This document shows positions 14,005-39,664 of a stretch of 64,000 bases of DNA, one piece after another (positions within the stretch are counted from its first letter, which is position 1; each line of letters begins with the position of its first letter). Made by a program: the position numbers and the translations under genes. The stretch is from Selaginella moellendorffii. Its lineage: Eukaryota > Plantae > Lycopodiophyta. The stretch covers positions 1-64,000 of the forward strand of contig NW_003314388.1 in assembly GCF_000143415.4 (NCBI RefSeq), read 5' to 3'. The notes beneath the pieces were generated by a model. The model had not been told where the DNA came from, searched no databases, and worked only from the letters and a program-made list of their open reading frames with translations.

Positions 14005-17000
14005 ATGGGGGAGCCAAAGCAGGCCCGGATAGATGAGTACGAGCATTTGCCAAGCATTCGCTCTGAGATGTGGAACCATTCGGTGTGGAATGTGAGGGAG
14101 CTGAAGGAACAGAGATACAGAGCAGCAAACTTCGATTCAGAAGACTTCGAAGGCTTGCGCGAGCTGCTGCTGCAGGAGGACAACACTCTGGAGCACGTAA
14201 TGCTGTCCTGCGAGGGCTACCACAAAGTAGAGGGGTTTCTAGAAGCAGCTGTGTCCAAGCTAAGCATCCTTCGCATTAGAAATTACAAATTTGGCGAGGA
14301 GGTGATTTGCAGCTTGGATGAAGCTATTGCTGATGCCAAGCACGAGAATATGCCAATCAAGCTCAAGACGCTTCTTCTAAATTCTTGTGTTGTAGATTTA
14401 GATGCTTTAGCAGGATCAACACTTCCAAAGTATTTAGAACGTCTGGAGCTTTATAATTGCCGTTGCTCGCGCAACCTGGAGAAGCTGCTGCAAGATCCAG
14501 CCTGCAAGATCTGGGAGCTGTCCCTCAATCAGAATGAATACTTGACTCCTGCCCTCTTCCAGGCTGGAACAAGTCTTCGGAAGCTTACGCTGGTCGACAT
14601 CCCAAATGATCAGGCTCTACTCAGCCAAATCTGCGGAGCAATAGAGGGCCTTGGAATTTCAAATGAGCCCAGCCGTCACGACATCTCCGTGCTGGCAGGT
14701 TGCATGAACAACAATGCCAACTCCAAGGTCTGGTTCCTGGAGTTAACACATTTAGATTTATCTTTCGCGCAGCTCGTGGGCCAGCTGCTGAAGAACCCAT
14801 ATTGCAAGCTTCGAAGTTTCTCCTTGTTACCTGGGGTAAAGGTGAGTGGTTTTTTCAACATGTTCGTCTTGATATTGACACTCATTTTCTTAAGCAGAAA
14901 GAAAGCCCCTCCTCACGTGACCTTCATCTTCTCAAGGAGTATCAAGATGCGATTCTCAGCAATTTGGAGGCCAACTACAGCAGCCGGATCCAGAGACTGC
15001 GCATTCGCGGGGAATGGGCTTCCAAACTGTTGGAGGACAGATGGTTGAGGGTGAAGTACCGGAATGCTCTATTTCAGAAGAGCCCCGTTCTTGCACAAAG
15101 CGCTCCAGTCACACCATCAACTGCCAAGCTGTTCATGTGCGGCCACACTGCCTCGGGCAAGACCACCATCTCCACCAATCTGGTCCGCCCCTATGCAGCC
15201 CTCTGGCAGTGTGTGAAACCGCCATGTCAGGATCATGCATCAACGGTGGGAATTGAGAGGAGGACTCTCAGATTGGGAGAGGGGAAGAAACTCCTGATTT
15301 ACGATCTGGGAGGCCAGGAGGTCTACCACGCTTTTCATCACTATTTCCTCAGGGGCAGCGACAAAGATCTCTTCATGGTGGTGTGCAAGGTTGGAGGTCC
15401 TGGAGGTGAGATGAAAGCTGAGCTCCAATACTGGCTTCGCTTCATAGCGGCCCACCAAACTGCAACACCAGCTAGGAAACCCACCATTTTCTTAGTACTC
15501 AACATCTTTGTTCGTGATTACCGTCTTTTCGAAGAAGCTCAAACAGCTGCGACGTCACTGTTCCTCGAGTATAAGGACAGGCTAGACTTTGTTCAGGGCC
15601 AACGTGATCATCACTATTTCGAGGTGAATGGGTTGAATGCTCGTCAGGTACAGAAGGAACTGAAGCCCAAGCTGGCAATAGCAGTGGGCGAAATGATCAA
15701 TGAAGTTCCTGTGATTCCCTGGACTTGTGATGAGGTTATCAGAAGGCGGGCTTCATCCACACCATGGTATCATATCCACACACGGGCACAAACAATTGTC
15801 CAGCAGAGGGTGGTCGACCTACATGAGATGTCCAAGGCTTGGTTCCAGGGGGAGAACGAAGTTCAGGCATTTGCTGCACAATACACATTCATCTGCCTAC
15901 ATGACATGGGAGAAGCTGTCTACTTTGGGGCAGATGACACATATCAAAACACGGATCCAAACGACAAGGAAGCTGCATTGATTGTCAACAATGCAGTTCT
16001 AGACATGCCATGGTTTCTCCACACTGTGTTAGGAATTTTCATTCCTAAGCAAGACAGAAACGATACGATGAAGTGGGGGGAACCCAAGTGGTCTGCTGCG
16101 AAAGCAGTACAAGAGCTCAAAACACTGGGGAGACTGCAGAGGGCAACATCTATTTCCTGCTCAAGCTGCTCTGTGAGATGGGGGTTCTCATTCCTGATGG
16201 CATGAGGAGCTGGGACATAAGGTGGTCAGAGCCACGAAATCGGCCAGAACACCTCATTGTGCCTGCATTATTGAGTGATGAGTTCACAGGATGGATTGAA
16301 AGCGAGCAAACATATGATTGTTGGGGTCGGAGATTGCAAGCAGACGACACTATGAAGGGCTTCGTTCTTCTCCCATCAGGTAATTATGCTTTGACTTGTT
16401 GGATTGGACTAATACTGATTGAAAGCAGGACTATTTGCGGTTATTCAAGCCAAGGTGAAGGAAATGTGTGACAGATGGGGCCATGGAAGTAAGATTGGTG
16501 CTGGTTGGGTTTCCTTCCAAGAGGATCTCATTCAAGTTCTGGTGACTATTGGTGGGGATTATAAGCATTGGACAGATCGGCAATGGGTGGATATTATGTT
16601 GATGGTGCCCAAGGAGGAAAAGAGGGGACTCAAAGGGGAGCAGTTCATGAAGGAGATACGAGATTGTGTAATAAAGGAAACTAATAGGGCCTGTCCTTTC
16701 ATCAAGCTTGAAGAACATGTTTTGAATCCAGGGAAGGTAAGACAGTTTGGAAAAGCATCAGGACAACAGGGGTCATGCAGCAAGAGCTCTCGGGCACTGC
16801 AAGAAGTTAAAAAGATGGTAGCTAGGGAGGGGTTTGATTATCATTTTACTTGGGATTTTGGTGACTCCACTAGTGCCATGGAACTCTTGATGCAAAGTGA
16901 AGTCAACGAGATTATTCAGCGATGTAAGGGTGTTATTGAAGAGGTTGTCACAGAATACAACCAGCACATAGTGCCAGTGTATCAAAACCAGCAGCAACAG

Positions 17001-17747
17001 CTTGTGCAGGTCGAGATCCCAAAGTTTGAAAGTGAAGACATGAACAAGCTTGCCAACTTTTGCTATCAATTACACAAGCATCAAGAGAAATCTATGCAGG
17101 GGATTCATTTATATATGGAGGACTTTAAGGTCTCCATAACAGATATCAAAGAATCTTTACAGAAGCTGCAAAAGGGCCTGAAGGACACAGAAAACGCATT
17201 GATCAAGAGCTGCTCATCACTGTTGGAATCCATTAAGCTGGAGTGTCCTAAACTCCCGCACCTTACAATGGAGTCAAATCTGTTGCTCAAATATTCACCA
17301 CTGATTGGGAAACGAGCAAATATTAGCTACTTATGTGAGCATCCAAGCGGCTGTCACCCAGTTGATTTGAAGAAGTACCCAGGAGTACCAATCACTATCC
17401 CAAATCAATGGTTCAAAAAGTATCGCAACGTCTTCGTCCCAGGCATCACAATGTGTTTCACCCTTGCAAAGCTCGGTAAAGTGGCATTGCCTGTGGGAGG
17501 GGAGCTGGTCGGCACCTTGATTGAGCTTGGTGCAAATGGCTTGAAGGCTACAATCGACTCCTGCTTTGAAGGCGATCTCAATAACAGGTTGCAACCAGCA
17601 TCAAAAGATGACATTATGGAGTTGTTTGAGTACGTGAAAAAGAATTCACCTCAACGATATGGCGAGGACCGAATCTTGATGATGAAGAAGTGCTTTGGAC
17701 TCGTCAAAAGTCCAAGTGGCTGGGTCTGTGAAGATCACTATTATTGA
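14005..17747 (+). pseudogene. TORNADO1-like Roco (LRR-Roc-COR) gene copy A, with a 1-nt frameshift
   Basis: LRR-like N-terminus, P-loop GHTASGKTT (15141), G3 DLGGQ (15303), COR-like region, coiled coil and C-terminal CEH motif. Introns 14842-14897 and 16380-16428 splice in frame. One base is missing at about 16127-16130 relative to copy B. Confidence 0.8.
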
Positions 17748-18499
17748 AGAAGAAGGGCACAGGCTTAGTAAAACTACTAAAATGCAGAAGCAGTGAAGTG
17801 AAGGAATTTTTATTCAAAGAAAGAAAACAAAAGAAAGCAGCTAAGTTCTGGGCGAAATGTTTGGAACGATATGCCTGGGTTATCCACAAGGTTATAGTTC
17901 ATATATTGTATGTCTAGAGCTCATATAATCCATCTGCTGTCCAGGGAAGTTAGAGATCAAACCTTAAGACCTCTCTCCACACCATCGGACACTCCAAAGT
18001 TTCCACAAAGCAACGGTGCAAGTCCTACGATTCAGCCCCTGTGCACGCATGAGCGTAGCATGTAAGTAAAAAATTCTCATTGAAAATTCTAGACTAGGGA
18101 AAGAGCTTTCTGCTTGGCCATTCTTCTCCTCCAGCCTCCTGGCCTGTGCTCCAGGATCAGACGGGGTGATCCAGGCCGGGAACATGTTCGTGTCGGGTCA
18201 TGTTTCCTCGGGTCGTCGTTGGGAAGGAGAGCTGTGGGGATCGCCACGTTTAACGGGCAGAATCCGGGGACTTCGAGGTTGCAAAGGCGGTCTTTGCTTC
18301 CAGGCCGGACGTGAGCGACGATGTAATTACCAAGGCGTTCCAAGTCTCGGATCCCGAGCTTGTGAGCGAGCTCAGGAAACTCATCAAGTAGACTTGAGTC
18401 ACCTTAGATATGATTGTCTGGAAAAAAAAAACATTCACAAACAGAAGGACCTGTGTAAAAACGCTCTCAGAACTTCCTTTCCTAATATTTTACTTTTCT

Positions 18500-18862
18500 G
18501 TGGTTTAGGGCTCGTGGCTCTGGAGTGGAGCGAATGGCGCTCGCCGGTAAGCTCCTCCCGCCCGAGCAAGCCAATGGAAGGGCCTACATTGCCACGGATT
18601 CCAGGGACGTAGAGGGCGACGATGGGGAAGTACTCTCCCATTGTTTGGGACCTTGACGACGGCAGGAAATCTGTACCTGCGCCGCCCTTGTCTATATTCT
18701 CCGAGGCGGCTGCTGCTGGAAAGGATGAAACACAGCCGATTGCCAACCGATGTGCTTTCCAGCGGTGGTGGTGACAAGACAAATCCGGGAGCCGAGATGA
18801 GGAGCAGCGGTACGAGCAGGAACTTAACGAGAAAGAGCTTGTGGAACTTAGCGACAACGAGG
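18500..18862 (+). pseudogene. CDKG 5' fragment (direct copy of about 44066-44530, with deletions)
   Basis: Shares GGGCCTACATTGCCACGGATTCC...GAGCTTGTGGAACTTAGCGAC with the CDKG first exon. Confidence 0.85.
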
Positions 18863-18869
18863 TATGGAG

Positions 18870-20344
18870 CTTACCGATACTTTGCTGACGACTGCGAAGC
18901 TCAGGCATAAATCGAGTGGAGCTTCATGTGGTGGAATGGAAGGTAAATGCTTAAGCTGCAGAATAACAGGAGCATGATCTGAACCATCCAGTTTTAAGCT
19001 TCTCCCACCACTCCATCTCCCATAGAGAAACATCAACACTGGCAACAACTAGTCTGTCTTTTTGGCGCACCTCGGAACGCTTAAAACTTGAGAAGAATGT
19101 CACACATATCTGTTCCACACTTTGCAAATCCGTCACAGGTACTATTGTCATGCGATCCATCAGTAGCCCGACAATGTCCAGTGCAGGGACCGGCAATAAG
19201 AACATGATCAATGCGACTGCCGTAGTTAAACATGCCTGAGACCAGTAAGCCTCTGCTCTGGACAAGATACTAATAAGCACGTATGATTTGCCCAGACAAA
19301 AACCGTGAACAGTTACCTTTCAGGATGAAACACGCGAAACGCGTCTGAAAACGCACCACCCTCACTCACCAGCAATGATGTAAGCCATTGACGGCTCATG
19401 TTAAAATGAACATGCTAGAAAGTACTAGAAATCAGTGAGTGATTTACGGATTGGTATCAAATTTTGGGCCAACATGAATCAATAGGATATGAAGAAATGT
19501 TCAAGTCCCCCACGATAATAATCCTCCTGCCTTGTTTTATGACGCTTTCCAGCCTACACTGCGAAGGAAGAAAAAGTTTGACAACAAACAGCAACGCATC
19601 TGTCAATACCTGTAACACTTTCAGCTTAAAGTCCTGCCGTTCAGCATCTCCACAGCCAACATTAGGACCATAGATATTGAAGAGTACTAGGTAGAAAGAA
19701 TCCATCAACAAACAGAAGAGAACAATCAGTGCGAATGAAAGCGAGGAAGCTCCATACCAAAATGCCCGTGATCCGTGACGATGCATCGGCCTTCGTTGTC
19801 CAAATCGAGAAGTTCCTGCCTCGTAAATCCTTCCACGGTTAGAACTGGATCGTAGCTTCCAAGCCAGAACTCTTTGTCACCTTCACCAGCTCTGGCACTA
19901 GTCAAGGGACCCGTAAAGCCTTCCTCGGCAGCCACAGGCAACGCTACATTGTTGCCACACTCCACCTTGCAAAACGTAGCCACACCTGACCAGCAATGCG
20001 CTTTATTCCGATTCCAAGGATGAAGAAAAGTTCTAAATCGCAAAGTCTCTACCCAGTCCAACAATGCAAAACAATACCCGAGGCAGCCTTTCTTCACGGT
20101 GCGCGTGCAAGAGAAGAAGGATTCGGATATTGCTGTGGCAATATCCGCGGTGAGCTCCTGCCTGCGGATCTTAGTCTCCTAGCTCGAGAGCAAAGAACAA
20201 ATCAGCAACAACAATCCAAAATCCAATCCAAATCACCTGGAGGCAGATGATGTTTGCGTCGAGCGAGTCCAAGAAGGCGCGCAGCGATCTCGCTGGAGAC
20301 AATCGCGCTCTCAGTCCATTCACATTGTAGCTCACGATCCTCAT
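18870..20344 (-). pseudogene. APE2 truncated inverted copy
   Basis: Mirror of 31863-33420 ([15 protein letters not shown]...) with deletions and frameshifts; lacks the C-terminal zf-GRF exons. Confidence 0.9.
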
Positions 20345-20471
20345 TTCCCCGCCCAGCAACGGAGGAGCTCAAACGAAATAGGGCAAAAGCAATCTTATAG
20401 TCTATCAAAGAGTTATACTCCAATCTATAGTAGTTAACAAGGAATAGAATACAATGTATTTGTCAAGTAGC

Positions 20472-21290
20472 TTACACTGGCACTGGCGAGGAGCTCGACT
20501 GCTTGGACATGAGATACGCTGTGAGAAGTGGCTCCAACTTCCCGTCCATGATTCCACTGATATCCGACGTCTCCACGTTTGTTCTCAAATCCATGACGAG
20601 CTTGTAAGGATGGAAGACGTAGTTTCTTATTTGCTGCCCCCACTCCGCCTTGACGACGTCCCCTCGAATCTCTTTGATCTCGGCAGCCCTTTGGTCCTCG
20701 AGAATCACCAGGAGCTTGGATTTGAGCAGCACGATTGCTTTTATCTTGTTCTGGAGTTGGCTTCTTTTCTCTAGAAACATGAAGAATGTTTTAGAGCACT
20801 GCGCTGTTACATCGTTTCATGTACCTGAGCAGCGAAGAGCAATCCCGGTTGGAATGTGCGTGACACGAACAGCAGTCTCGACCATGTTTACGTTCTGCCC
20901 GCCTTTGCCTCCAGATCTACACAAGGTCGCCTTCGGGTCTCCACCTCGATCTCGCTCTCTGCATTATTGGAAAATGGATCTTGACACGCCGGGGATTGAA
21001 CCCAGGACCACCACTGAGCTACCTGCCCTGGTTGTGTGCTGTTCAGCTTAGTTCTAACATGCATCACTTCTACTCCTGCAAAGCTCGTCTGTGAAGAGAA
21101 GCAAACGTTGAGACAAGAGTTTTGATAAAACGACCGTTTGGCTCACCTGTCGGAGACCTTTAGAGTTGAAAGGCAATTGTCTCACCAGCCTGTGCGTGCC
21201 TTTCTCTCCGGAGATATAACCATACGCATATCTCCCGTCGATCTCGAGTGTGGCCGATTTGATCCCAGCTTCCTCGCCAGGAGAACTCTC
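20472..21290 (-). pseudogene. prfB 3' fragment, inverted copy
   Basis: Mirror of about 30985-31721. N-terminus absent, SPF motif changed to LPF, and an insertion near 20960-21060. Confidence 0.9.
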
Positions 21291-21329
21291 CCCCACATGT
21301 ATTAACCATGGAACTATCTCAAGCAACTT

Positions 21330-22085
21330 ACACCAGCACTCGATTGCTTGGACATGAGATATGCTGTGAGAAGTGGCTCCAAATTCCCACCCATGATGAC
21401 ACTGATGTCCGACGTTTCCGTGTTTGTTCTCAAATCCTGTAAGGATGGAAGACGTAGTTTCTTATTTGCTGCCCCCACTCCGCCTTGACAACGTCTCCTT
21501 GGCTTCTCTCGAACTCGAAGAAAGTTTTAGAGCGCTAGATCTCTAGAAACATTGTTTCATGTAACTTAGAAGCGAAGAGCAATCTGTTGGAATGTGCGTG
21601 ACACGAACAGCAGTCTCGACCTTGTTTACGTTCTGCCCGCGTTTGCCTCCAGATAATCTCAAGGTCTTTTTCGGGTATCTCCGCCTCGATCTCGCTCTCT
21701 TCCAGCATCATTTCTACTCCTGTAAAGCTCGTCTGTGAAGAGAAGCAACCGTTGAGACAGGAGTTTCGATGAAACTAAAGATTGTGTCGTAGACCTTTAG
21801 AGTTGAAGGCGATTGTCTCACGATGAGCCTGTAGATGCGTTGTTTTACATACATTTCAGCACAGGATTGAGCTGAGATGCTTCTAAGGATGTACAAGCGA
21901 TGGGTTACCAGTCAGGCCTTAAGTGGACTGTGGTGGAGAGTTCTCTAGGTGAGGAAGCTGGGATTAAATGGGCCACACTCGGTATGATTATATCTCTGGA
22001 GAGGCATCTCAAACCTTGGAAATAGATATCAGCAGACACTGTTCGGTTCAGTCAGCGCCTGCAATAATAGTGATCCGAGCTTGTT
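21330..22085 (-). pseudogene. Second, more degenerate prfB fragment (mirror of about 40240-40960)
   Basis: Shares the deletions and internal inversion of the 40.2-41.0 kb copy. Confidence 0.85.
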
Positions 22086-23175
22086 ATATATTGGACAGAC
22101 TAGCAATTTTTTGATCTTTCCCCTAAGCATTTCTTCAAGTTCATCAAGCCAATTGTGTATAATATTGGCTGGCTTACTGTGTGAATTTCTCTTATTTGTA
22201 ACAAATTGCTGTTGACTAAAAGGAATGACAAAGAGAAGCAGTACATCAGAGGTCTACTAGCAACAATTTGCACCGGAAATCGTTGCTGTTCTTAACCTCC
22301 AGAACCTCTGGAGCAATGGATCTGATTTGGTTTGATATACGAAGTTTTCCTTGGCAGTGGTGGATTTTGCTGGGGAGGGTCATAAAACTTGTATCCAACT
22401 CTAGATTCTAGAATTATGGAAGAGCCGGGAGGACAAGAAACAGGATCAAAGCGGCTTAGCTGAAGCACTACCTGGATGAAAAGGTACGATTTCACACTCT
22501 CGTCACCTTGCAGTCAGCACAGCCTGATATAAGTTCAAGAAGACGGCGGCGTAGCTATACGTAGAAGTTTACCGTCTCTCTCTCCCTTCCGTCCACGTAA
22601 AAACTTTCCCTTCCAGGCTCCAGGAAAAGGTTCGTGGACCATGTCTACTAAAGCTCAGAAATCTTGTGTGTCTATTTCTTCCAGGGAAAGGAATCACGCG
22701 GGCGTCCAATCACAAACAAACAGCTCGACCAAAAACAGTGGCTAAGAAACTCTCGTATCAATCTAGCACTTTTTGATGTGTTTGATTTTGCGTGAATGCC
22801 CAGAACTTCGAAGGCAAAAAATATCATGTCCTGCAAACCCAATCGCGACACATTTTACTTTTAATCGAGACTTTCGAGCCAAAGTGCGGCCCAATGCGGC
22901 GCTGTGGTGATTTTTCGATAGCTAGCACACATTTCTCGCGGATTTTCTTCCCGAAAACACGTCCTCCACCTCCTTTTGTTCTTGATTGTTTGTTTCCAGC
23001 CAGCCAAGCCAGCGTCTTGTTAGACTTCTCGTCCGTTTAAATGTCAACACAATGGTGGCGACTTTTGTGGAACTTCTCTTTTCCCGTGCTAGATCCTTAT
23101 CTCCGGGTGAGATTCCTCTTAACACCTGTGTTCTCCAGGCTCGGGATCTTTCGTCGTCAGGGAGGAGCTTCAATC

Positions 23176-24513
23176 ATGAAGTGCTTGGCGCTCTTCAAAC
23201 ATCTCAAGTCTGGCTCCAAGGCGAAGGAACCACTGGACAAGTTCTCATCATCTAGCACGAGCGGTAGTAGCTGCAACAGCGGCAGCAAATTATCGTCGCG
23301 ATCAAGCAGCCGAGACGATCGCAGCTCGGCCTCCTCGTCTTCCTCCTCGTCTTCCAGGTGCGATCGCAGAGCTAATTTGGAGTGTGTAACAAGCTTTCCC
23401 GGCGATCAAGCCGTGGCTATGGCACTCGCCTCCACCGAAGGGGAGCACTGTTTCCTTTACGTGTCATCAAACACTTCCAGCTCCCGGCGGATCGACGTGC
23501 TCGACTGTAGCAGCAGGGAATTGTCCACAGTTGGCAGCCTTGCTCCCAAAACCCCACCGGTGAGAGCAATCCTCGCGAGCGGCGCCAGAGTTTTCACCGC
23601 CCATCGCGATATGAAGATCAGAGTGTGGACGAGAAGGATCGCCGAGAGCCAGGACGAGCTCATGGTCGTCAAGCACGAGCTCTCCGCAACGCTACCAAGC
23701 CTCCAGGATAGAATGTGTTTCCGATCGCTTTCCATGAGTCGCGACCGCGACCACCACCACCACCACCACCATAGCCATCGCCTTCCAAGACGAAGACGAC
23801 GATCAGACGCCTCGGACTCCACCAAGCTCGTCCAGCACAGGGACGCCATCTCGGGGCTAGCAATCAGTCCTTCTGGGAAGATCCTCTACTCGGGATCCTG
23901 GGACAAGACCATCAAGGTGTGGAGGATCGCCGCATCCTCCAGCTCCTCCTCCATCGCCATCAAGTGCGTGGAATCCTTCACGGCTCACGACGACGCAGTG
24001 AATGCGCTCGCGGTGGCTTCTTGTGATGGCGATGGATTGACGACACTCTACTCGGCCTCCGCCAGCGGCGAGATCAGAGCCTGGGAGTCATCAGATCACC
24101 GCAAGATCAAGCACCGCCTCGCCGCCAGCTTCCACGATCACTCTTCGGCCGTCAACGCATTGCTGCTCAGCCGCGATTCTACTCTCCTCTACTCGGGATC
24201 GGGCGACAAGACCGTGAGAGTGTGGGCGCGATCGAACGAGAATCTCCACGATCTGAGGGTGGTGGAGATCCTGAGAGGGCACAGGCGAGCGGTGCTGTGC
24301 CTGGCGGCGACCATCGACGGCGAGCTCCTGTGCAGCGGCTCCGCGGACAAGAGCGTGAGGATCTGGCGGGGCCATTGCTGCGTGGCCGCGCTGGATTTGC
24401 ACTGTGCGCCCGTGAAATCGCTCGCCATGGCCCGCGATCTCGAGAGCTCCTCCTACACTGTCTATAGTAGCGCCCTAGACGGGAATTTTAAAATCTATAC
24501 CGCTTTGCCCTAA
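23176..24513 (+). CDS. Intronless WD40-repeat protein, JINGUBANG-like
   Basis: WD motifs LYSGSWDKTIKVW, LYSGSGDKTVRVW, LCSGSADKSVRIW and FTAHRDMKIRVW. Likely start MKCLALF at 23176; an upstream ATG at 23041 is possible. Confidence 0.85.
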   Translation: MKCLALFKHLKSGSKAKEPLDKFSSSSTSGSSCNSGSKLSSRSSSRDDRSSASSSSSSSSRCDRRANLECVTSFPGDQAVAMALASTEGEHCFLYVSSNTSSSRRIDVLDCSSRELSTVGSLAPKTPPVRAILASGARVFTAHRDMKIRVWTRRIAESQDELMVVKHELSATLPSLQDRMCFRSLSMSRDRDHHHHHHHSHRLPRRRRRSDASDSTKLVQHRDAISGLAISPSGKILYSGSWDKTIKVWRIAASSSSSSIAIKCVESFTAHDDAVNALAVASCDGDGLTTLYSASASGEIRAWESSDHRKIKHRLAASFHDHSSAVNALLLSRDSTLLYSGSGDKTVRVWARSNENLHDLRVVEILRGHRRAVLCLAATIDGELLCSGSADKSVRIWRGHCCVAALDLHCAPVKSLAMARDLESSSYTVYSSALDGNFKIYTALP

Positions 24514-24546
24514 AACGCGCAGAGCTCCCTTTACTACCGTCGGATA

Positions 24547-30024: not shown

Positions 30025-30093
30025 AGCCCATAGCCCTAAAAACAGAGGACCGAAATATTTCTATCTAGCCTAAAACCCTAGTTTCCGTTTGCC

Positions 30094-31721
30094 ATGGAGG
30101 CTTTGAGAGCGAGCGCCTTGGCTATGGCGCCGACAACACAGCAGCGCCTCCAGTTGCCCTCGCAGGTATCCAAGAGGTTCTCAGTGGATACTGGATTTTG
30201 TGCAAGAACTCGATTCCATGAGCAAGCTCTCGAGGGGGGGAAGAGAATGTCATCGATTTCATGGACGGTATGTGCTGCTTTAGATACTGGCAGCCAATCG
30301 GTGACAGAGCTAGGTAAGTGTCTCGATTCTCTAGGAGCAAAGGCTGATGAATCGATCAAACTCGGCAGAATTTTACAGTTTGAGGAAGGATGTAGAGAAT
30401 GTGGCCGCTCGCGTTCGCCAGCTCCTCGATTCGGCAGATCTGGAGCAACAGGAAGCTGTTCTGGCCGACCTGGAGAACCAAGCGAGCGATCCAGCGTTTT
30501 GGGAAGAGCGTTCCAAGGCACAGAAGATACTCTCCGAGCTCAACGAGATCAAAGATCGCGTCAATCTTTACAAAACTTTTCGAGCCAAGGTAATTTGCTG
30601 AGAAAAACAAACTACAAGCACTTTAACTTGGAAGAACAGGTTGACGATGCCCAATGCATAGTGGAACTTTTGGAGGAAATGGAGAGTCCGGACGCTGCTT
30701 TGAAACTGGAAGCCGCGGAGACGGTCTCGTGGATCACCGCGGCGATGGATAGGTTCGAGTTAAACAAGCTCCTGTCTGGAACTTATGACAAAGAAGGAGC
30801 TCGGATCACTATTACCGCAGGCGCTGGCGGAACCGATGCGCAGGTAACATCTTGTGCTGATATCTTTTTGGAAGGTTTGAGATTGTTCTACATACATTCC
30901 AGCACAGGATTGGGCTGAGATGCTTCTAAGGATGTACCAGCGATGGGCTACCAGGTCGGGATTTAAGTCGACTGTGGTGGAGAGTTCTCCTGGCGAGGAA
31001 GCTGGGATCAAATCGGCCACACTCGAGATCGACGGGAGATATGCGTATGGTTATATCTCCGGAGAGAAAGGCACGCACAGGCTGGTGAGACAATCGCCTT
31101 TCAACTCTAAAGGTCTCCGACAGGTGAGGCAAACGGTAGTTTCATCGAAACTCTTGTCTCAACGTTTGCTTCTCTTCACAGACAAGCTTTGCAGGAGTGG
31201 AAGTGATGCCTCTGCTGGAAGAGAGCGAGATCGAGGTGGAGATACCCGAAGGCGACCTCGAGATTACAACGTGTAGATCTGGAGGCAAAGGCGGGCAGAA
31301 CGTAAACAAGGTCGAGACTGCTGTTCGTGTCACGCACATTCCAACAGGGATTGCTCTTCGCTGCTCAGGTACATGAAACGAAGTAACAGCGCAGTGCTCT
31401 AAAACTTTCTTCATGTTTCCAGAGGAAAGAAGCCAACTCCAGAACAAGATAAAAGCAATCGCGCTGCTCAAATCCAAGCTCCTGGTGATTCTCGAGGACC
31501 AAAGGGCTGCCGAGATCAAAGAGATTCGAGGGGACGTTGTCAAGGCGGAGTGGGGGCAGCAAATAAGAAACTACGTCTTCCATCCTTACAAGCTCGTCAA
31601 GGATTTGAGAACAAACGTGGAGACGTCGGATATCAGTGGAATCATGGACGGGAATTTGGAGCCACTTCTCACAGCGTATCTCATGTCCAAGCAGTCGAGC
31701 TCCTCGCCAGTGCCAGCGTAA
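30094..31721 (+). CDS. prfB: Chloroplast peptide chain release factor 2 (PrfB1/HCF109-like), multi-exon
   Basis: AGAGGTDAQ|[39 protein letters not shown] (GGQ motif), [18 protein letters not shown]; transit-peptide-like N-terminus. Confidence 0.95.
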
Positions 31722-31862
31722 GTTACATGAGATCGTTCCATAGTTCCATAGTTAATACATTGTATTCTTTTCTTTGGTAACTACTATAACACTTTGATAT
31801 GATAGACTATAAGATTGCTTTTGCCCTATTTCGTTTGAGCTCCTCCGTGGCTGGGCGGGGAA

Positions 31863-34095
31863 ATGAGGATCGTGAGCTACAATGTGAATGGACTGAGAGC
31901 GCGATTGTCTCCAGCGAGATCGCTGCGCGCCTTCTTGGACTCGCTTGACGCAGACATCATATGCCTCCAGGTGAGAGATTGGATTTTCGATTGTTCTTGC
32001 TGATTTGTTCTTTGTTCTCGGGCTAGGAGACTAAGATTCGCAGGCAGGAGCTCACGGCGGATATTGCCACGCCGCAAGGATACGAATCCTTCTTCTCTTG
32101 CACGCGCACCGTGAAGAAAGGCCGCCTCGGCTACTCAGGTATGATTTTGGTATTGTTTTGCATTGTTGGACTGGGTAGAGACTTTGCGATTTAGAACTTT
32201 TCTTCATCCTTGGCATTGGATTAAAGCGCACTGCTGGTCAGGTGTGGCTACGTTTTGCAAGGTGGAGTGTGGAAACAATGTAGCGTTGCCTGTGGCTGCC
32301 GAGGAAGGCTTTACGGGTCTCTTGACTAGTGCCAGAGCTGGTGAAGGTGACAAAGAGTTCTGGCTTGGAAGCTACGATCCAGTTCTAACCGTGGAAGGAT
32401 TTACGAGGCAGGAACTTCTCGATTTGGACAACGAAGGCCGATGCATCGTCACGGATCACGGGCATTTTGGTATGGAGCTTCCTCGCTTTCATTCGCACTG
32501 ATTGTTCTGTTCTGTTTGTTGATGGATTCTTTCTACCTAGTACTCTTCAATGTCTATGGTCCTAATGTTGGCTGTGGAGACGCTGAACGACAGGACTTTA
32601 AGCTCAACTTTTACCAAGTGTTACAGGTATTGACAGATGCGTTGCTGTTTGTTGTGAACCTTTTTCTTCCTTCGCAGTGTAGGCTGGAAAGCATCTTAAA
32701 ACAAGGCAGGAGGATTATTATTGTGGGGGACTTGAACATTTCTCCATATCCTATCGACTCATGTGACCCTGGCCCAGAATTTGATACCAGTCCGTAAGTC
32801 ACTCACTGATTTCTAGTACTTTTTTAACATGTTCATTTTAACAGGAGCCGTCAATGGTTTAGATCATTGCTGGTGAGCGAGGGTGGTGCGTTTTCAGACG
32901 CGTTTCGCGTGTTTCATCCTGAAAGGTAACTCTTCACGGTTTTTGTCTGGCCAAAACATATGTGCTTATAAATATGTTGTTCAGAGCAGAGGCTTACACA
33001 TGCTGGTCTCAGGCATCGGGTGCGGAGGAGTTTAACTACGGCAGTCGTATTGATCACGTTCTTATTGCCGGTCCCTGCGCTGGCCATTGCCAGTCTCCTG
33101 ATGGATCGCATGGCAATAGTAGCTGTGACGGATTTGCAAAGTGTGGAACAGATATGTGTGACATTCTTCTCGAGTTTAAGCGTGCAAAGCTGGACACCCT
33201 TCCGAGGTACGCAAAAAAGACAGACTAGTTGTTGCCAGTGTTGATGTTTCTCTATGGCAGATGGAGTGGTGGGAGAAGCTTAAAACTGGATGGTTCAGAT
33301 CATGCTCCTGTTATTCTGCAGCTTAAGCATTTACCTTCCATTCCACCACATGAAGCTCCACAACTGGCTGCTCGATTTATGCCTGAGCTCCGCGGTCGTC
33401 AGCAAAGTATCGGTAAGTAACTTCTTATAGCGAAGGACGTTTCTGACAACCGCTAGCGCTGACTGGTGCAGTTTCCATTTTCCAAAAGCTCAACGACAAA
33501 GCAACAGCTAACACGGAGCCTGATACAAGCCGAAATGTTTCCAAGCCCGCTTTTACACAGGAAACGGGCAGCAGGAAACTACAGAGGCTGTCACAAAGCA
33601 GATTGACACGGTTTTGCTATCAAAGGCATGAATCTTCTGACAAAATGAGCTGCACAGAGGTCGCAGTGCATGGGCAGAGCTCCAGCCTTACGGATGAAAT
33701 CCAGCAATCACCTGAATCATGCGACAATAACAACTGCTCAGAGGTTGCAGCTTGCGGGGAGAGTGCCAGTCTGATGGATATGTCAGATGAAACACCGACG
33801 GAAAGCTCTCAGCAAAGCTTGGAAAAATCTGCAGCAGGCTGGGAAAGACTGAAGAGCCTGATGTCGCGAAATCTTCCATTGTGCAAGGGACACGGTGAGC
33901 CTTGTGTCGTGAGAACAGTTAAGAAGGCTGGTCCCAATCTTGGCCGTGGTTTCTACGTCTGTGCTCGAGCAAAGGTGATCTTCCTTGAAAGATTCTTCAT
34001 AATTTATTCGTTGTTTCGAGCAGGGCCCAGCTTCCAATCCTGAAGCGAGGTGCGATCATTTTCAGTGGTCTTCGTCCAGGACAAGAAAGAAGTGA
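31863..34095 (+). CDS. APE2: AP endonuclease 2 (EEP domain plus C-terminal zf-GRF), multi-exon
   Basis: [35 protein letters not shown] and CKGHGEPC...[11 protein letters not shown]...CDHFQW. Confidence 0.92.
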
Positions 34096-34584
34096 AAAGT
34101 TGCTTCTATATCTAAGCTATTAACGTGCATTCGAGTACACCGATTGTTATATCTCAGCTTCGCTGCTTAGGTGAGAGCGTCTTAACACAGGTACTTCTAT
34201 TATGAGTTTCCTGAGCTCGCTCACAAGCTCGCGTTCCGAGAACTGGAACGCCTTGGCAATCACGTCGTCGCTCTTGGGAAGTTCCCAGATTCTGGCTGTT
34301 AAACGCGCCGATCCCCACAGCTACCTCCTTCGCAACGTTGAGCTGAAAGTGGACGACCCGAGGAAACACGAACATGTTCCCGGCCTGGATCACCCCTCTG
34401 AACAAAGAGGAGCTCTGTGACGAGCGACCTCAACTTGTTACACGTTATTATCGTCCTCGAAGAATCTTGTTGGACATCTTGAATGGCTTCCAAGCTTTCT
34501 TCAAGTACGAAGATGGTCGAGGATCTATGTCTTGGAAGCTAAGCTGTCAATGGAAGCCTCAAAGATGTGTGAGCTTTGAAAGTA

Positions 34585-35113
34585 CTATCTACTTTCGTCT
34601 GGAGGCGACGAGGCCATGGCGTTTGATCGCTCCCCCGTGATGACTGGCATCCACAGCTTAGAAGTCTCTCTCAAGAGGCTCTCGGCCTCTTCGTCCTGGG
34701 CCAATTCCGCGACTTTGGCTTCCAAGAGTCCCATCCTCTCGCTCAAATCGCTAAGCTGGTTCTCGATCTATACACAAACAAAACACACACACTCAGTGAA
34801 CAACAAGAAGGTTAAAAAAAAAAAACCTCTTACATCCTCCGCAGGCGCAGGAACTTTGCTCGTTTCGGCGAAGAGATCACTGAGCTTGTCCCGGAGCTCC
34901 AAATCGGCAGCCCCTTCAGCCTCCTCGAACTGCCAATTCAAAGGAGGTAGCACCAATCAATTCCACAGACTTGAAGGCTAGCTCTACCTGATTCAAGATG
35001 GCGTGAAGGCAATTAAACAGATCAGAAGTGGTGGCCGCCTGCTGGGGTGGCGCTACATTCTCCACGGGGGCCTCTTCTTCTTCTTCTTCAGGCGCCAAGC
35101 TCGTCATAGCCAT
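34585..35113 (-). CDS. Small acidic coiled-coil protein of unknown function, 134 aa (exons 35113-34988, 34929-34834, 34767-34585)
   Basis: Three phase-0 exons with GT-AG introns splice into one open frame, MAMTSLAPEEEE...LLRETSKLWMPVITGERS...; a telo-box AACCCTAAA lies next to the ATG. Confidence 0.75.
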
Positions 35114-35965
35114 GAACCCTAAATTTGACAAAAGTAAATCATATAATCTTAAACATATTCAAAAAAATTCTGAACCCTAAATTTGAAAAAATTAAATCAT
35201 ATCATCTTATACGTTACCTAATTCACTCCACGTGTTCTTCATGCTCCAGTCCAACCAACTTCCCTTCTCTCTCTCAGATCGGGTTGGTGCATTCAAAATA
35301 CAAGAATACAATTCGTGTTGAACTAAAAGTTTAATACAGAATTGAGTGCCATTCCAGAATGGCTCCTCTTTTTCTCTGTTTCTTTGTCCTTTTACTGTAC
35401 AAAATGGCCTACCTTGCGACGAACAAGGCTTTGTTAGTTTCCTTGTTACGCATCAGGCGAAGGAGACGACTGAGTCGAGATCGATGGCGATGATGCCTCG
35501 AGTAGAGATTGTGGAACCGGAATGAGGGAGTTTCTGCATCTCTCACACAAAAGAGTCCTCGTCCGATCCTCGAGCACAGGCCAGGAGGCTGGCGGCCGCT
35601 CCTGCGAAGACTAGAATGGCCAAGCAGCAGCTCATTGAGAAAGTTTGCTGGCTCTTTCCCTAGTCTAGAATTTTCAATGAGAATTTTTTACTTACATGCT
35701 AGGCTCATGCGTGCACAGGGAGTAACTGAGGAACAGCTAAATCGCAGGACTCCTTTGCACCGTTGCTTTGTGGAAACTTTGGAGTGTCCGATGGTGTGGA
35801 GAGAGGTCTTAAGGTTTGATCTCTAATCGACATACAATACATGAACTATGGATAACCCAGGCATATCAGCAAAAACATTCCACCTGCTTTCTTTTGTTTT
35901 TTTTCTTTGAATACAAACTCCTTTTCTTCATTTTAGTAGTTTTACAAAGCCTGTGCCCTTCTTCT

Positions 35966-38900
35966 TCAATAATGGTGATCTTCACAGACCCAGCCACATG
36001 GACTTTTGACGAGTCCAAAGCACTTCTTCATCATCAAGATTCGGTCCTCGCCATATCGTTGAGGTGAATTCTTTTTCACATACTCAAACAACTCCATAAT
36101 GTCATCTTTTGATGCTGGTTGCAACCTGTTATTGAGATCGCCTTCAAAGCAGGAGTCAATTGTAGCCTTCAAGCCATTTGCACCAAGCTCAATCAAGGTA
36201 CCGACCAGCTCCCCTCCCACTGGCGATGCCACTTTACCGAGCTTTGCAAGGGTGAAACACATTGTGATGCCTGGGACGAAGACGTTGCTATACTTTTTGA
36301 ACCATTGATTTGGGATAGTGATTGGTACTCCTGGGTACTTCTTCAAATCAACTGGGTGACAGCCGCTTGTATGCTCACATAAGTAGCTAATATTTGCCCG
36401 TTTCCCAATCAGTGGTGAATATTTTAGCAACAGATTTGACTCCATTGTAAGGTGCGGGAGTTTCGGACACTCCAGCTTAATGGATTCCAACAGTGATGAG
36501 CAGCTCTTGATCAATGCGTTTTCTGTGTCCTTCAGGCCCTTTTGCAGCTTTTGTAAAGATTCTTTGATATCTGTTATGGAGACCTTAAAGTCCTCCATAT
36601 ATATCTGAATCCCCTGCATAGATTTCTGTTGATGCTTGTGTAATTGGTAGCAAAAGTTAGCAAGGTTGCTCATGTCATCACTTTCAAACTTTGGGATCTC
36701 GACCTGCACAAGCTGTAGCTGCTGGTTTTGGTACACTGACACTATGTGCTGGTTGTATTCTTTGACAACCTCTTCAACAGCATGCTTACGTGGCTGAATA
36801 ATCTCGTTGACTTCACTTGGCATCAAGAGTTCCAAGGCACTTGTGGAGTCACCAAAACCCCAGGTAAAGTGATAATCAAAGCCCTCCCTGGCTACCATCT
36901 GTTTGACCTCTTGCAGTGTCCAAGAGCTCTTGCTGCATGATCCCTCTTGTCCTGATGCTTTTCCAAACTGTCTTACCTTCCCTGGATTCAAAACATGTTC
37001 TTCAAGCTTGATGAAAGGACAGGCCCTATTAGTTTCCTTTACTACACAATCTCGTATCTCCTTCATGAACTGCTCCCCTTTGAGTCCCCTCTCTTCCTGC
37101 TTGGGCACCATCAACATAATATCCACCCATTGCCTATCTGTCCAATGCTTATAATCCCCACCAACAGTAACCAGAACTTGAATGCGATCCTCTTCAAATG
37201 AAACCCAACCTGCACCAAGCTCACTTCCATGGCCCCATTTGTCACACATCTCCTTCACCTTAGCTTGAATAACTGCAAATAGTCCTGCTTTCAATCAGTA
37301 TTAGTCTAATCCAACAAGTAATCCAGCATAATTACCTGATGGGAGAAGAACGAAGCCCTTCATAGTGTCGTCTGCTTGCAATCTCCGACCCCAACAATCA
37401 TATGTTTGCTCGCTTTCAATCCATCCACTGAACTCATCACACAATAATGCAGGCACAATGAGGTGTTCTGGCCGATTTCGTGGCTCTGACCACCTTATCT
37501 CCCAGCTAGTCATGCCATCAGGAATCAAAACCCCCATCTCACAGAGCAGCTTGAGCAGGAAATAGATGTTGCCCTCCGCAGTCTCTCCAAGTGTTTTGAG
37601 CTCTTGTACTGCTTTCACAGTAGACCACTTGGGTTCCCCCCACTTCATCGTATCGTTTCTGTCTTGCTTAGGAATGAAAATTCCTAACACAGTGTGGAGA
37701 AACCATGGCATGTCTAGAACTGCATTGTTGACAATCAATGCAGCTTCTTTGTCGTTTGGATCCCTGTCTTGATATGTGTCATCTGCCCCAAAGTAGACAG
37801 CTTCTCCCATGTCATGTAAGCAGATGAATGTGTATTGTGCAGCAAATGCCTGATCTTCTTTCTCCTCCTTGAACCAAGCCTTGGACATCTCATGTAGGTC
37901 TACCACCCTCTGTTGGACAAGTGTTTGTGCCCGTGTGTGGATATGATACCATGGTGTGGATGAACCCCGCCTTCTGATAACCTCATCACAAGTCCAGGGA
38001 ATCACAGGAAGTTTATTTATCATTTCGTCCACTGCTATCGCGAGCTTGGGCTTCAGTTCCTTCTGTACCTGACGAGCATTCAACCCATTCACCTCGAAAT
38101 AGTGATCACCACGTTGGCCCTGAACAAAGTCTAGCTTGTCCTTATACTTGAGTAACAGTGTCGTCGCAGCTGCTCGAGCTTCTACCAAGAAACGGTTATC
38201 ACGAACAAAGATGTTGAGTACTAAGAAAATGGTGGGTTTCCTAGCTGGTGTTGCAGATTGGTGGGCCGCTATGAAGCGAAACCAGTATTGGAGCTCTGTT
38301 TCCAAGTCACCTCCAGGACCTCCAACCTTGCACACCACCATGAAGAGATCTTTGTCGCTGCCCCTGAGGAAATAGTGATGAAAAGCGTGGTAGACCTCCT
38401 GGCCTCCCAGATCGTAGATCAGGAGTTTCTTCCTCTCTCCAAATCTGAGAGTCCTCCTCTCAATTCCCACTGTTGATGATGCATGATCCTGACGCGGCGG
38501 CTTGACGCACTGCCGGAGGGCTGCACAGGTGCGGACAAGATTGGTGGAGATGGTGGTCTTGCCCGAGGCAGTGTGGCCGCACATGAACAGCTTGGCAGTT
38601 GATGGTGTGACTGGAGTGCTTTTTGCAAAAACGGGGCTCTTCTGAAATAGAGCATTCCGGTACTTTACCCTCAACCACCTGCCCTCCTGCACTTTAGAAG
38701 CCCATTTGCCTCCAATTTGCAGTCTCTGGATCCGGCTGCTGTAGTTAGCCTCCAAGCTGCTGAGAACCACACCTTGAAGTCTTGAATTTCTTATAAATTC
38801 ACTCCTGAGAAAAATAAGTTGAGGACTTTCCCATAACGGAGACAAGGAGACACTTTCAAGCTTGCAATATGGGCTCGCCAGTAACTGACCCACGGGCTTC

Positions 38901-39664
38901 ATTAAAGTTACTGGATCGATTGATTCTAACTCCAGGAACCAGAGCTTGCACTTGGCATTGTTGTTTATGCATTCTGCCAGCAGGGAGATCTCCTCATGGC
39001 TGGCCACATTTGAAATTCCAAGGCCTTCTATTGATCCGCAGATTTGGCTGAGTAGCGCCTGATCATTTGGGGTGTTGACCAGCCTAAGCTTCCGTAGACT
39101 TGTTCGAGCCTGAAAGAGGGCAGGGGTCAAGTATTCATTCTGATCCAGGGACAGCTCCCAGATCTTGCAGGCTGGATCTTGCAGCAGCTTCTCCAGGTGG
39201 GGCGAGCAATCGCATTGTTTAAGCTCCAGACGTTCTAAATACTTTGGAAGTGTTGATTCTGCTAAAGCATCTAAATCTACAGCACAGGAATATAGAAAAA
39301 GCGTCTTGAGCTTGATTGGCATCCCCTTGTGCTTGGCAGCAGCAATAGCATCATCCAAGCTGCGAATCACCTCCTCACCAAATTTGTGTCTAATTCTAAG
39401 GCTGCTCAGCTTGGACACAGCTGCTTCTAGAAACCCCTCCACTTTGTGGTAGCCCTCCCTCCACACGAATACGTGCTCCAGAGTGTTGTCCTCCAGCAGC
39501 AGCAGGTTGCGCAAGCCTTTGAAGTCTTCTGAATCGAATTTTGCTGCTCTGTATCTCTGTTCCTTCAGCTGACTCACACTCGACACCCAATGGTTCCAAC
39601 TCTCAAAGCGAATGCTTCCCAAATTCTCGTAATCATCTATCCGGGCCTGCTTTGGCTCCCCCAT
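35966..39664 (-). CDS. TORNADO1-like Roco protein (LRR-Roc-COR-coiled coil), copy B, intact, about 1215 aa (exons 39664-37336, 37284-35966)
   Basis: LRR-like repeats (LKTLFLYSC, LERLELKQC, IWELSLDQN, LRKLRLVN), GHTASGKTT, STVGIE, IYDLGGQEVYHAFH, LHDMGEAVYF and ISYLCEH...CHPV. Start assumed at MGEPKQ. Confidence 0.85.

What the first reader, a model, noticed from the sequence alone, without database searches (positions are those of the whole stretch)
14005..39664. Two Roco (LRR-Roc-COR) paralogs with a hypervariable LRR region and a conserved GTPase/C-terminus: immune-receptor-like evolution
Seen: copies A and B are almost identical across Roc, COR and the last about 250 aa, but differ densely in the N-terminal LRR region. 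Examples: EYEHLPSIRSEMWNHSVWNVRE vs DYENLGSIRFESWNHWVSSVSQ; HVMLSC vs HVFVWR; ELYNCRCSRN vs ELKQCDCSPH; ELTHLDLSFAQL vs ELESIDPVTLMKP. Many changes fall at x positions of LxxLxLxx strands. Established: angiosperms typically have a conserved TORNADO1 Roco with a developmental role, while diversified LRR-Roco genes in the brown alga Ectocarpus were proposed as immune receptors. Inference: this is an expanded, diversifying non-NLR receptor family.
Basis: partly seen in the sequence, partly recalled or inferred. Interest (0 to 1): 0.78.

Follow-up and report, generated by a model that had tools for sequence, protein, structure and literature searches.

The report
Hypervariable LRR-GTPase gene pair, Selaginella
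A spikemoss (Selaginella moellendorffii) locus holds one intact and one frameshifted copy of a leucine-rich-repeat GTPase (Roco) gene from a small family whose predicted binding surface changes faster than silent sites, as in plant disease-resistance genes, so it is a credible but untested non-NLR receptor family.

Summary
The window is Selaginella moellendorffii scaffold GL377692.1:1-64000. Copy B (35966-39664, minus strand) is an intact 1215-aa gene annotated 'ROCO family protein'.

A and B differ at 12% of bases in the first ~1 kb and 6% in the rest. Synonymous divergence is uniform (dS 0.080 vs 0.100). Non-synonymous divergence is three times higher in the N-terminus (dN 0.125 vs 0.043).

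Across eight family copies, my codon site models give M2a vs M1a LRT 67 for codons 1-245 (17% of sites, omega about 6) and 3.8 for the rest. The signal recurs at position 7 of the LxxLxLxx motif.

AlphaFold and Foldseek show a ribonuclease-inhibitor/NLRP-type LRR solenoid and a COR domain.

Only two of nine copies are intact, which fits birth-and-death evolution. The family lies in a lycophyte+fern clade apart from TORNADO1.

An immune role is inferred, not shown. The scan reached similar conclusions on two other pieces of this genome (s1-341456, s1-337360).

The parts
35966..39664 (-). Copy B: intact LRR-Roc-COR gene, 1215 aa (P0006 = XP_002992043 / EFJ06892, 'ROCO family protein'). Exon 37336-39664, 51-nt intron 37285-37335, exon 35966-37284.
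   Evidence: The spliced translation equals P0006 exactly. Record coordinates equal window coordinates.
38837..39664 (-). Copy B N-terminal cap plus about 10 RI-type leucine-rich repeats (codons 1-276). The diversifying-selection signal lies in codons 1-164 (39173-39664).
   Evidence: AF2 mean pLDDT 80.9 with 10 alternating strand/helix units. Foldseek probability 1.0 to NLRP3/NLRP14/NLRC4/ribonuclease inhibitor LRRs. Site models.
38750..38842 (-). Copy B relic of intron 1. The donor GGTGAGT is mutated and the region is read through in frame as a B-specific linker.
   Evidence: Family DNA alignment: every other copy keeps GTGAGT...AAGCAG here.
38045..38596 (-). Copy B Roc GTPase domain (codons 357-540). 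P-loop GxxxxGKT and DxxGQ are present. The G4 motif lacks the Asp.
   Evidence: Pfam PF08477 33.4-33.7 bits against cut-off 27. Alignment.
36800..38044 (-). Copy B COR domain (about codons 541-938, spanning the 51-nt intron).
   Evidence: In the fold of the equivalent part of copy A (P0009), residues 1-228 match the C. tepidum Roco COR at Z 13.1 and LRRK2 at Z 12.7.
35966..36799 (-). Copy B C-terminal region: a long helix plus a conserved Cys/His-rich end. Fold not identified.
   Evidence: Conserved in lycophyte and fern relatives. phmmer alignments to bryophyte Rocos run to about residue 1040 of the query. No Pfam or informative atlas hit.
14005..17747 (+). Copy A: disrupted paralog. Exons 14005-14841, 14898-16379 and 16429-17747. 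Introns 14842-14897 and 16380-16428.
   Evidence: NCBI annotates only the C-terminal 506 aa, from 16178 (P0009).
16118..16205 (+). Copy A lesion: a 1-bp deletion between 16125 and 16126 (codon 692), with the resulting premature stop at 16203-16205.
   Evidence: All other copies, including the 100%-identical allele-like copy on GL377714, have the extra T. Stop position.
14005..14829 (+). Copy A LRR domain, in frame.
12506..13560 (+). Relic of a third copy directly upstream of A. It consists of a 5' flank (12506-12734, 95.6% to B's flank), a 702-bp unique insert, a CDS start fragment (13437-13493) and a fragment of codons about 120-139 (13501-13560).

Best explanation
The locus holds members of a lycophyte Roco (LRR-Roc-COR) gene family that evolves by birth and death. 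Segmental, tandem and inverted duplicates arise, exchange sequence and mostly decay. The ligand-binding face of the N-terminal RI-type LRR solenoid is driven to change amino acids faster than silent sites. The most likely working model is an intracellular recognition receptor. In this model the variable rim of the LRR, positions 5, 7, 8 and 10 of each LxxLxLxxC/N repeat plus the N-terminal cap, binds a changing partner, most plausibly pathogen-derived. Binding would then be relayed through the Roc nucleotide switch and the COR dimerisation module to the conserved C-terminal region. Shown here: the architecture, the copy states, uniform dS, omega above 1 and its recurrence at one repeat position, and placement outside the TORNADO1 clade. 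Inferred: ligand binding, switch behaviour and any role in immunity. In this window only copy B can make the full protein. Copy A is a frameshifted allele.
For: A vs B: codons 1-245 give dS 0.080, dN 0.125, omega 1.55. Codons 313-1215 give dS 0.100, dN 0.043, omega 0.43. Non-coding A-B divergence is 6-11%. The co-duplicated RF-1 segment is 90.4% identical. The LRR part, at 12% divergence, therefore evolves faster than neutral DNA. Site models on 8 copies: N-terminus M2a vs M1a LRT 67.3, omega2 6.05, p2 0.17; rest LRT 3.8. The result is robust to a star tree (LRT 78), to using only the 5 in-frame copies (37) and to separate trees per segment (35, 30, 2.3). M0 omega for codons 1-164 is 1.92, with LRT 10 against omega=1. 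Eight null simulations gave LRT 0-8.9. The posterior for the positive class at motif position 7 in repeats R2-R8 is 1.00, 1.00, 0.97, 0.99, 0.54, 0.73, 0.82. Core Leu positions are never selected. Enrichment gives p=1.9e-4. LRR fold. COR fold. Roc. Pseudogene states. Sequence exchange: A and its GL377714 counterpart are 100% identical for 3.19 kb and then 95.3% over the last 509 bp. S. moellendorffii is reported to have about 2 NLRs (PMC3782705). Brown-algal LRR-ROCOs show the same kind of signal (PMC11378527).
Against: There is no expression, binding or phenotype data. Seven of nine copies are broken, so the family may be dispensable at present. The codon models are my own implementation. Three of 8 null simulations exceeded the chi-square 5% value, so the p-values are anti-conservative; the observed LRT is still 7.5 times the largest null value. 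Gene conversion among paralogs and multi-nucleotide changes can inflate omega. Seven of the 18 selected sites (codons 16-31) lie in a segment modelled with low confidence (mean pLDDT 35-46 over residues 1-20, 72 over 21-30). The pairwise A-B omega is not significantly above 1 on its own (CI 0.87-3.2). The Roc G4 motif lacks the guanine-specifying Asp, so GTP switching is not assured.
Confidence: 0.62

Rival explanations
1. Relaxed constraint or pseudogene decay. The LRR part is simply unconstrained in a redundant, mostly dead gene family, so amino-acid changes accumulate neutrally.
For: Seven of nine copies carry frameshifts or stops. Omega in the rest of the gene is also fairly high (M0 0.585). 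The A-B pairwise omega has a CI that includes 1.
Against: Neutral decay gives omega of 1, not a class at about 6. M2a beats M1a by LRT 67, and by 37 with in-frame copies only. Omega for codons 1-164 is 1.92, significantly above 1. Framework Leu/Cys positions and the helices stay invariant even in broken copies, while position 7 varies in repeat after repeat. Indels in codons 1-245 of the five copies with an in-frame LRR part (B, A, D, E, F) are all multiples of three.
Confidence: 0.12
2. An old 5' segment plus homogenisation of the 3' part. The LRR region is older, and gene conversion keeps Roc-COR and the C-terminus similar.
For: Gene conversion or recombination does occur. A and the GL377714 copy switch from 100% to 95.3% identity at about window 17240. 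Pooled pS is lower in codons 313-776 (0.058) than in the flanking parts (0.100, 0.108). The trees are star-like.
Against: Synonymous divergence in the LRR part (0.080) is not higher than in the rest (0.100) for A-B, and pooled pS is 0.100 vs 0.108 for the C-terminal exon. The excess is entirely non-synonymous (Fisher 3.5e-10 vs 0.53).
Confidence: 0.05
3. Real diversifying selection, but for a non-immune partner. Examples are self or kin recognition, gamete or symbiont recognition, or co-evolution with a variable endogenous protein, in line with the developmental role of TORNADO1.
For: The closest named relative, TRN1, is a developmental gene (Cnops et al. 2006, cited in PMC11378527). Nothing here links the family to pathogens.
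Against: The combination of tandem and segmental copy-number turnover, frequent pseudogenes and hypervariable LRR rim positions is the classical signature of pathogen-driven receptor families. The family is not in the TRN1 clade.
Confidence: 0.2

Closest known systems
Arabidopsis TORNADO1/LOPPED1 (TRN1), the plant LRR-Roc-COR protein
   Same: Same domain order: N-terminal RI-type LRR, then Roc, then COR, then a long C-terminal region. NCBI names copy B 'protein TORNADO 1'. The ESM Atlas feature score to the TRN1 cluster is 0.97.
   Different: Only about 26% identity and E=4e-8 to the Ipomoea TRN1 representative. The quick ML tree places it in a lycophyte+fern clade (SH-aLRT 100), apart from the clade holding TRN1, moss and Marchantia proteins. 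TRN1-clade proteins keep a THxD G4 motif and this family does not. This family is multi-copy with a hypervariable LRR.
Brown-algal LRR-ROCO candidate immune receptors (Ectocarpus, Saccharina; Zambounis et al. 2012; PMC11378527)
   Same: LRR-Roc-COR architecture, gene-family expansion, and positive selection (M1/M2, M7/M8) at a few positions on the concave LRR face.
   Different: In brown algae each 24-residue LRR is its own exon, and diversity comes from exon shuffling and alternative splicing. Here all LRRs lie in one exon, the repeats are irregular RI-type units 22-33 residues apart, and diversity comes from point substitution plus paralog exchange. The brown-algal ROCOs were reported to show no strong relationship with those of red or green algae.
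Plant NLR (NB-ARC-LRR) resistance-gene clusters
   Same: Birth-and-death evolution in clusters, many pseudogenes, sequence exchange, and hypervariable solvent-exposed LRR residues with omega above 1.
   Different: The switch is a Roc small-GTPase domain with COR, not a STAND NB-ARC ATPase. The LRR is N-terminal rather than C-terminal. No CC, TIR or RPW8 domain was detected.
Animal NLRP/NLRC4 and ribonuclease-inhibitor LRR domains
   Same: Best structural matches of the N-terminal model (Foldseek E 3e-6 to 1e-4, probability 1.0).
   Different: 13-20% sequence identity. This is fold-level similarity only. No NACHT domain is present.

Membership tests
Roco proteins (Roc-COR tandem) | Roc (Ras of complex) GTPase domain | tested here: met
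   Pfam PF08477 at 33.4-33.7 bits against gathering score 27, E about 5e-8. PDB sequence hits are to LRRK2 Roc only, E 0.005-0.02. P-loop and DxxGQ are present; the G4 Asp is absent.
Roco proteins (Roc-COR tandem) | COR domain directly C-terminal of Roc | tested here: met
   By sequence there is no Pfam COR-A or COR-B hit for this protein. By fold, the model of P0009 residues 1-228 matches C. tepidum Roco COR (3dpu_B Z 13.1, rmsd 3.2, 169 aligned), LRRK2 (Z 12.7) and LRRK1 (Z 10.2), with Foldseek E 5e-5. Relatives P0015 and P0024 hit COR-A below the cut-off.
LRR-Roco subgroup | Leucine-rich-repeat solenoid N-terminal of Roc | tested here: met
   No Pfam LRR hit and no PDB sequence hit with the family profile. 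AF2 gives pLDDT 80.9 and pTM 0.81 with 10 strand-helix repeats, and Foldseek gives probability 1.0 to RI/NLRP LRRs.
TORNADO1 orthogroup | Groups with angiosperm TRN1 in a phylogeny, to the exclusion of other plant Roco clades | tested here: not met
   Quick LG+G4 tree of 23 proteins. The family sits in a 12-row lycophyte+fern clade (SH-aLRT 100), separate from the 6-row clade with Ipomoea TRN1, Ceratodon and Marchantia proteins. Sampling is limited, rooting is at the midpoint, and the careful search did not finish.
TORNADO1 orthogroup | Single-copy, conserved developmental gene | tested here: not met
   Nine copies or relics with 76-80% amino-acid identity in the LRR part (copy B vs the other in-frame copies) and mostly disrupted ORFs. 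Developmental function is not testable here.
Diversifying immune-receptor-like LRR family (R-gene-like evolution) | Omega above 1 concentrated at solvent-exposed LRR positions, with dS not elevated | tested here: met
   with null simulations.
Diversifying immune-receptor-like LRR family (R-gene-like evolution) | Demonstrated role in pathogen recognition or defence signalling | not testable with these tools
   No expression or functional data are available. Two literature searches found no paper on lycophyte or fern Rocos, and one fern immune-receptor paper opened for the purpose does not mention Roc.
NLR (STAND NTPase-LRR) | NB-ARC or NACHT nucleotide-binding domain | tested here: not met
   Pfam scans at E up to 10 found only Roc and small-GTPase families.

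The most novel reading that the evidence does not exclude
[quoted passage not shown] A hypervariable RI-type LRR senses effectors. A Roc switch that has lost the G4 Asp, together with COR, controls oligomerisation. The conserved Cys/His-rich C-terminal region, apparently shared at least in part with bryophyte plant Rocos, acts as the signalling or executioner module. This could compensate for the near absence of NLRs (about 2) in Selaginella.
Probability: 0.3. Interest if true: 0.85.

Novelty: new variant of a known kind. Interest (0 to 1): 0.64.

Why it matters
Land-plant intracellular immunity is thought to rest on NLRs, yet Selaginella moellendorffii is reported to have only about two (PMC3782705). 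A second nucleotide-switch/LRR architecture with the evolutionary signature of resistance genes in a vascular plant would give a concrete candidate for what fills that gap. It would extend the 'LRR-Roco as immune receptor' idea from brown algae to land plants. It would also offer a route to the still unknown biochemical function of the plant Roco/TORNADO1 C-terminal region. The hypothesis is directly testable with one intact gene in this window (copy B) and one elsewhere (GL377569, P0010).

Tried and rejected
- Pfam at E up to 10 found no LRR or COR family for the window proteins. A profile of the LRR part found nothing in PDB sequences. Both domains were recovered only by structure prediction.
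- The word-index protein search found only the Selaginella family itself. The exhaustive phmmer search was needed to reach relatives, and none aligns to the first ~230 residues.
- The look-up of encoding contigs failed for isoforms P0004 and P0002. The longest isoforms worked.
- The careful mixture-model tree did not finish, so the quick LG+G4 tree was used.
- The C-terminal ~290 aa have no Pfam hit. The atlas score of 0.75 is uninformative. The VIA-align wide search matched only COR and a generic long helix.
- Literature searches for Selaginella plus ROCO, and for lycophyte or bryophyte ROCO immune receptors, found no paper on this family.
- I first suspected a retrotransposon in the GC-rich 22-30 kb interval. 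It was rejected, because the annotated genes there are WD40, ribosomal L37e, PRP4/Prp18 and RF-1.
- No upstream exon is needed. All database models start at the same Met, and the upstream frame has a stop.
- Method note: window DNA was given to the search tools exon by exon, by reference. Full-length proteins were handled through database ids (P0006, P0013, P0009). Exons were joined only inside scripts for the codon alignment.
Full report
**Identity of the locus**

Copy B's product is 100% identical to a Selaginella moellendorffii protein. The record coordinates returned for it (GL377692.1, gene 35966-39664, reversed) equal the window coordinates. The window is therefore GL377692.1:1-64000 of assembly GCA_000143415.2. 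The genes were already labelled 'ROCO family protein' (EFJ06892, D8T8V2) and, automatically, 'protein TORNADO 1'.

**Anatomy of copy B**

- Position: minus strand, 35966-39664.
- Structure: two exons (37336-39664 and 35966-37284) and a 51-nt GT..AG intron (37285-37335).
- The spliced translation equals P0006 (1215 aa) exactly.
- All other family copies have a further 50-60-nt intron (GTGAGT...AAGCAG) after the LRR domain. In copy B the donor is mutated and the region 38750-38842 is read through in frame, giving a B-specific linker.

**Anatomy of copy A**

- Position: plus strand, 14005-17747.
- Exons: 14005-14841, 14898-16379 and 16429-17747.
- Lesion: it lacks one T between 16125 and 16126 that every other copy has. 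This shifts the frame and gives a stop at 16203-16205.
- NCBI annotates only a C-terminal 506-aa product, starting at 16178 (P0009).

**Domains**

Pfam detects only Roc (33.4-33.7 bits against a cut-off of 27).

The N-terminal 276 residues were folded with five in-frame paralogs as the alignment:
- Mean pLDDT is 80.9 and pTM 0.81, with ten strand/helix repeats.
- Foldseek matches the ribonuclease-inhibitor-type LRRs of NLRP3, NLRP14, NLRC4 and ribonuclease inhibitor (probability 1.0, E 3e-6 to 1e-4).

The C-terminal 506 aa of copy A (P0009) were folded with 16 relatives, giving mean pLDDT 68:
- Residues 1-228 match the COR domain of the Chlorobium tepidum Roco (Z 13.1, rmsd 3.2, 169 aligned), LRRK2 (Z 12.7) and LRRK1 (Z 10.2) (Foldseek E 5e-5).
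- A long helix follows, then a conserved Cys/His-rich end of unidentified fold.

The architecture is therefore RI-type LRR, Roc, COR and a C-terminal region. The Roc P-loop and DxxGQ motifs are intact. The G4 position reads LN(I/F)F, without the Asp. The TORNADO1-clade proteins keep THxD there.

**Check of the observation**

- DNA identity between A and B is 88.05% in the first ~1 kb and 94.0% in the remaining 2.9 kb.
- Amino-acid identity is 78.7% (codons 1-245), 48.4% (246-312), 86.8% (Roc), 92.8% (541-776), 87.8% (777-965) and 95.2% (last 250).
- All quoted peptides are present.

Nei-Gojobori estimates for A vs B:

| Region | dS | dN | omega |
|---|---|---|---|
| Codons 1-245 | 0.080 | 0.125 | 1.55 (bootstrap CI 0.87-3.2) |
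| Codons 313-1215 | 0.100 | 0.043 | 0.43 (CI 0.32-0.60) |

- Synonymous differences do not differ between the parts (p=0.53). Non-synonymous differences do (p=3.5e-10).
- Non-coding A-B divergence is 6-11%.
- The RF-1 gene segment duplicated with the Roco unit is 90.4% identical.
- The LRR part, at 12% divergence, therefore evolves faster than neutral DNA, and the excess is amino-acid changing.
- The scenario of 'an old segment plus conversion of the 3' part' is rejected for this pair.

**Family-wide test**

DNA of further copies came from four other scaffolds. This gave nine copies or fragments: B, A, an allele-like A2 and a tandem copy C on GL377714, D and a fragment H on GL377569, E and a fragment G on GL377618, and F on GL377616.

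I built a codon alignment on B's frame. I excluded introns and the indel-rich linker (codons 246-312), and fitted GY94/F3x4 models that I wrote myself.

Results for codons 1-245 with 8 copies:
- M0 omega 1.35.
- M1a lnL -2387.84 and M2a lnL -2354.21, so LRT 67.3.
- The positive class has omega 6.05 and holds 17% of sites.

The rest of the gene serves as an internal negative control. It gives M0 omega 0.585 and LRT 3.8, which is not significant.

The N-terminal result survives these changes:
- a star tree: LRT 78;
- only the five copies whose LRR part is in frame: LRT 37;
- separate trees for three segments: codons 1-82 LRT 35, 83-164 LRT 30, 165-245 LRT 2.3.

For codons 1-164, M0 omega is 1.92 and differs from 1 (LRT 10.0, p=0.0016).

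Eight data sets simulated under the fitted M1a gave LRTs of 0 to 8.9. Three of them exceed the chi-square 5% value. My p-values should therefore be read as approximate, but the observed LRT is far outside this null range.

**Where the selected sites lie**

With the repeats put in register on the motif LxxLxLxx, the posterior for the positive class at position 7 is 1.00, 1.00, 0.97, 0.99, 0.54, 0.73 and 0.82 in repeats R2-R8. Positions 8 and 10 also score in some repeats. The Leu core positions never do.

- Positions 5/7/8 hold 6 of the 10 selected sites within residues 56-245 (Fisher p=1.9e-4).
- These positions carry on average 2.9 different residues across copies, against 1.3 for core positions.
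- In the model's DSSP string, position 7 is the last residue of the strand or the first after it.
- From the established geometry of LRRs (Kobe and Kajava; my own knowledge), strand positions 3, 5 and 7 face the concave surface.
- I had no model coordinates, so exposure was not computed.
- Seven further selected sites lie in codons 16-31 of the N-terminal cap, which is modelled with low confidence (mean pLDDT 35-46 over residues 1-20, 72 over 21-30). The D and G copies' indels in codons 30-35 are multiples of three, which argues that the segment is coding.

**Birth and death**

Only B and D have full open frames. Lesions in the other copies:

| Copy | Lesion |
|---|---|
| A | 1-bp deletion at codon 692 |
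| A2 | stop at codon 1049 |
| C | 11-bp and 4-bp deletions |
| E | 1-bp deletion at codon 854 and 2-bp deletion at codon 1067 |
| F | stop at codon 559 |
| G | two 4-bp insertions |
| H | stop at codon 1198 |

- A relic of a further copy sits directly upstream of A, at 12506-13560.
- A and A2 are 100% identical for 3.19 kb and then 95.3% over the last 509 bp. This is a recombination or conversion breakpoint near window 17240.
- Region-wise trees are star-like with weak support.

**Relation to TORNADO1**

- The exhaustive phmmer search found 135 hits, 11 of them below 1e-30. None aligns to the first ~230 residues.
- The nearest relatives, at about 34% identity, are other Selaginella 'ROCO family' proteins and proteins of the fern Adiantum nelumboides.
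- Liverwort and moss proteins, and Ipomoea TRN1, follow at about 25-30% identity.
- A quick LG+G4 tree of 23 proteins puts the family in a lycophyte+fern clade (SH-aLRT 100). That clade is separate from the one with TRN1, Ceratodon and Marchantia proteins.
- The family is TRN1-like in architecture but fails the orthology test. Sampling and rooting are limited.

**Interpretation**

Shown:
- an LRR-Roc-COR family with copy turnover;
- amino-acid diversification, faster than silent change, at a recurring motif position predicted to lie on the LRR face.

Inferred:
- that this face binds a changing ligand;
- that Roc-COR relays the signal;
- that the ligand is pathogen-derived.

Context for the inference:
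- Brown-algal LRR-ROCOs show the same kind of signal and were proposed as immune receptors (PMC11378527).
- S. moellendorffii is reported to have about 2 NLRs (PMC3782705).
- I found no paper describing this for lycophyte or fern Rocos.
- Two earlier follow-ups of this scan reached similar conclusions on other pieces of the same genome (s1-341456, s1-337360). I did not use their data.

**Verdict**

- The immune function is untested.
- Copy A is a broken allele.
- I class the finding as a new variant of a known kind: LRR-Roco candidate receptors, here in a vascular plant, with RI-type repeats in a single exon and no exon shuffling.

Noticed in passing
window 18870-20960 vs 33417-31220, and 31873-33373 vs 41040-42522: The inverted duplication that carries the two Roco copies also carries a peptide-chain-release-factor (PCRF/RF-1) gene segment, at 90.4% identity. 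A third partial copy (87-91%) lies beyond copy B. The duplicated unit is therefore larger than the Roco gene.
   Followed up: partly
window 44225-44848; L001 14697-15302, L002 3142-3733, L003 3358-3765 and 10383-10711: A ~600-bp segment overlapping the 5' part of a protein-kinase gene recurs next to Roco copies on the other scaffolds at about 92% identity. It is annotated there as 67-68-aa Pkinase fragments. It looks like part of the repeated unit.
   Followed up: no
window about 17235-17245 (B-genomic 3190-3198); L001 8001-11746: Copy A and its counterpart on GL377714 are identical for 3.19 kb, apart from the frameshift, and then differ at 25 sites in the last 509 bp. No sampled copy is the donor (best match 95.9%). 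The two haplotype copies carry different disabling lesions: a frameshift at codon 692 and a stop at codon 1049.
   Followed up: partly
window 38200-38230 (copy B Roc G4 region): The lycophyte+fern Roco clade has LN(I/F)F where the TRN1-clade proteins have THxD, so the guanine-specifying Asp is missing. The liverwort-only clade also deviates.
   Followed up: partly
window 680-1630 vs 6829-7755: A direct repeat of about 950 bp at 95% identity, 6.1 kb apart, in a region with strong GC and AT skew. It is possibly the LTR pair of a retrotransposon.
   Followed up: no
window 60001-64000: GC content drops abruptly to 29-33%, against 45-55% in the rest of the window.
   Followed up: no
window 35966-36500 (copy B last ~170 aa): The C-terminal end is conserved in Selaginella and fern relatives, with invariant Cys/His/Trp positions (motifs of the type CP..P, CE...G.HPV and WVC.DH) and a Gly-rich hydrophobic stretch. 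It is possibly a metal-binding or membrane-associated module. Its fold was not identified.
   Followed up: partly
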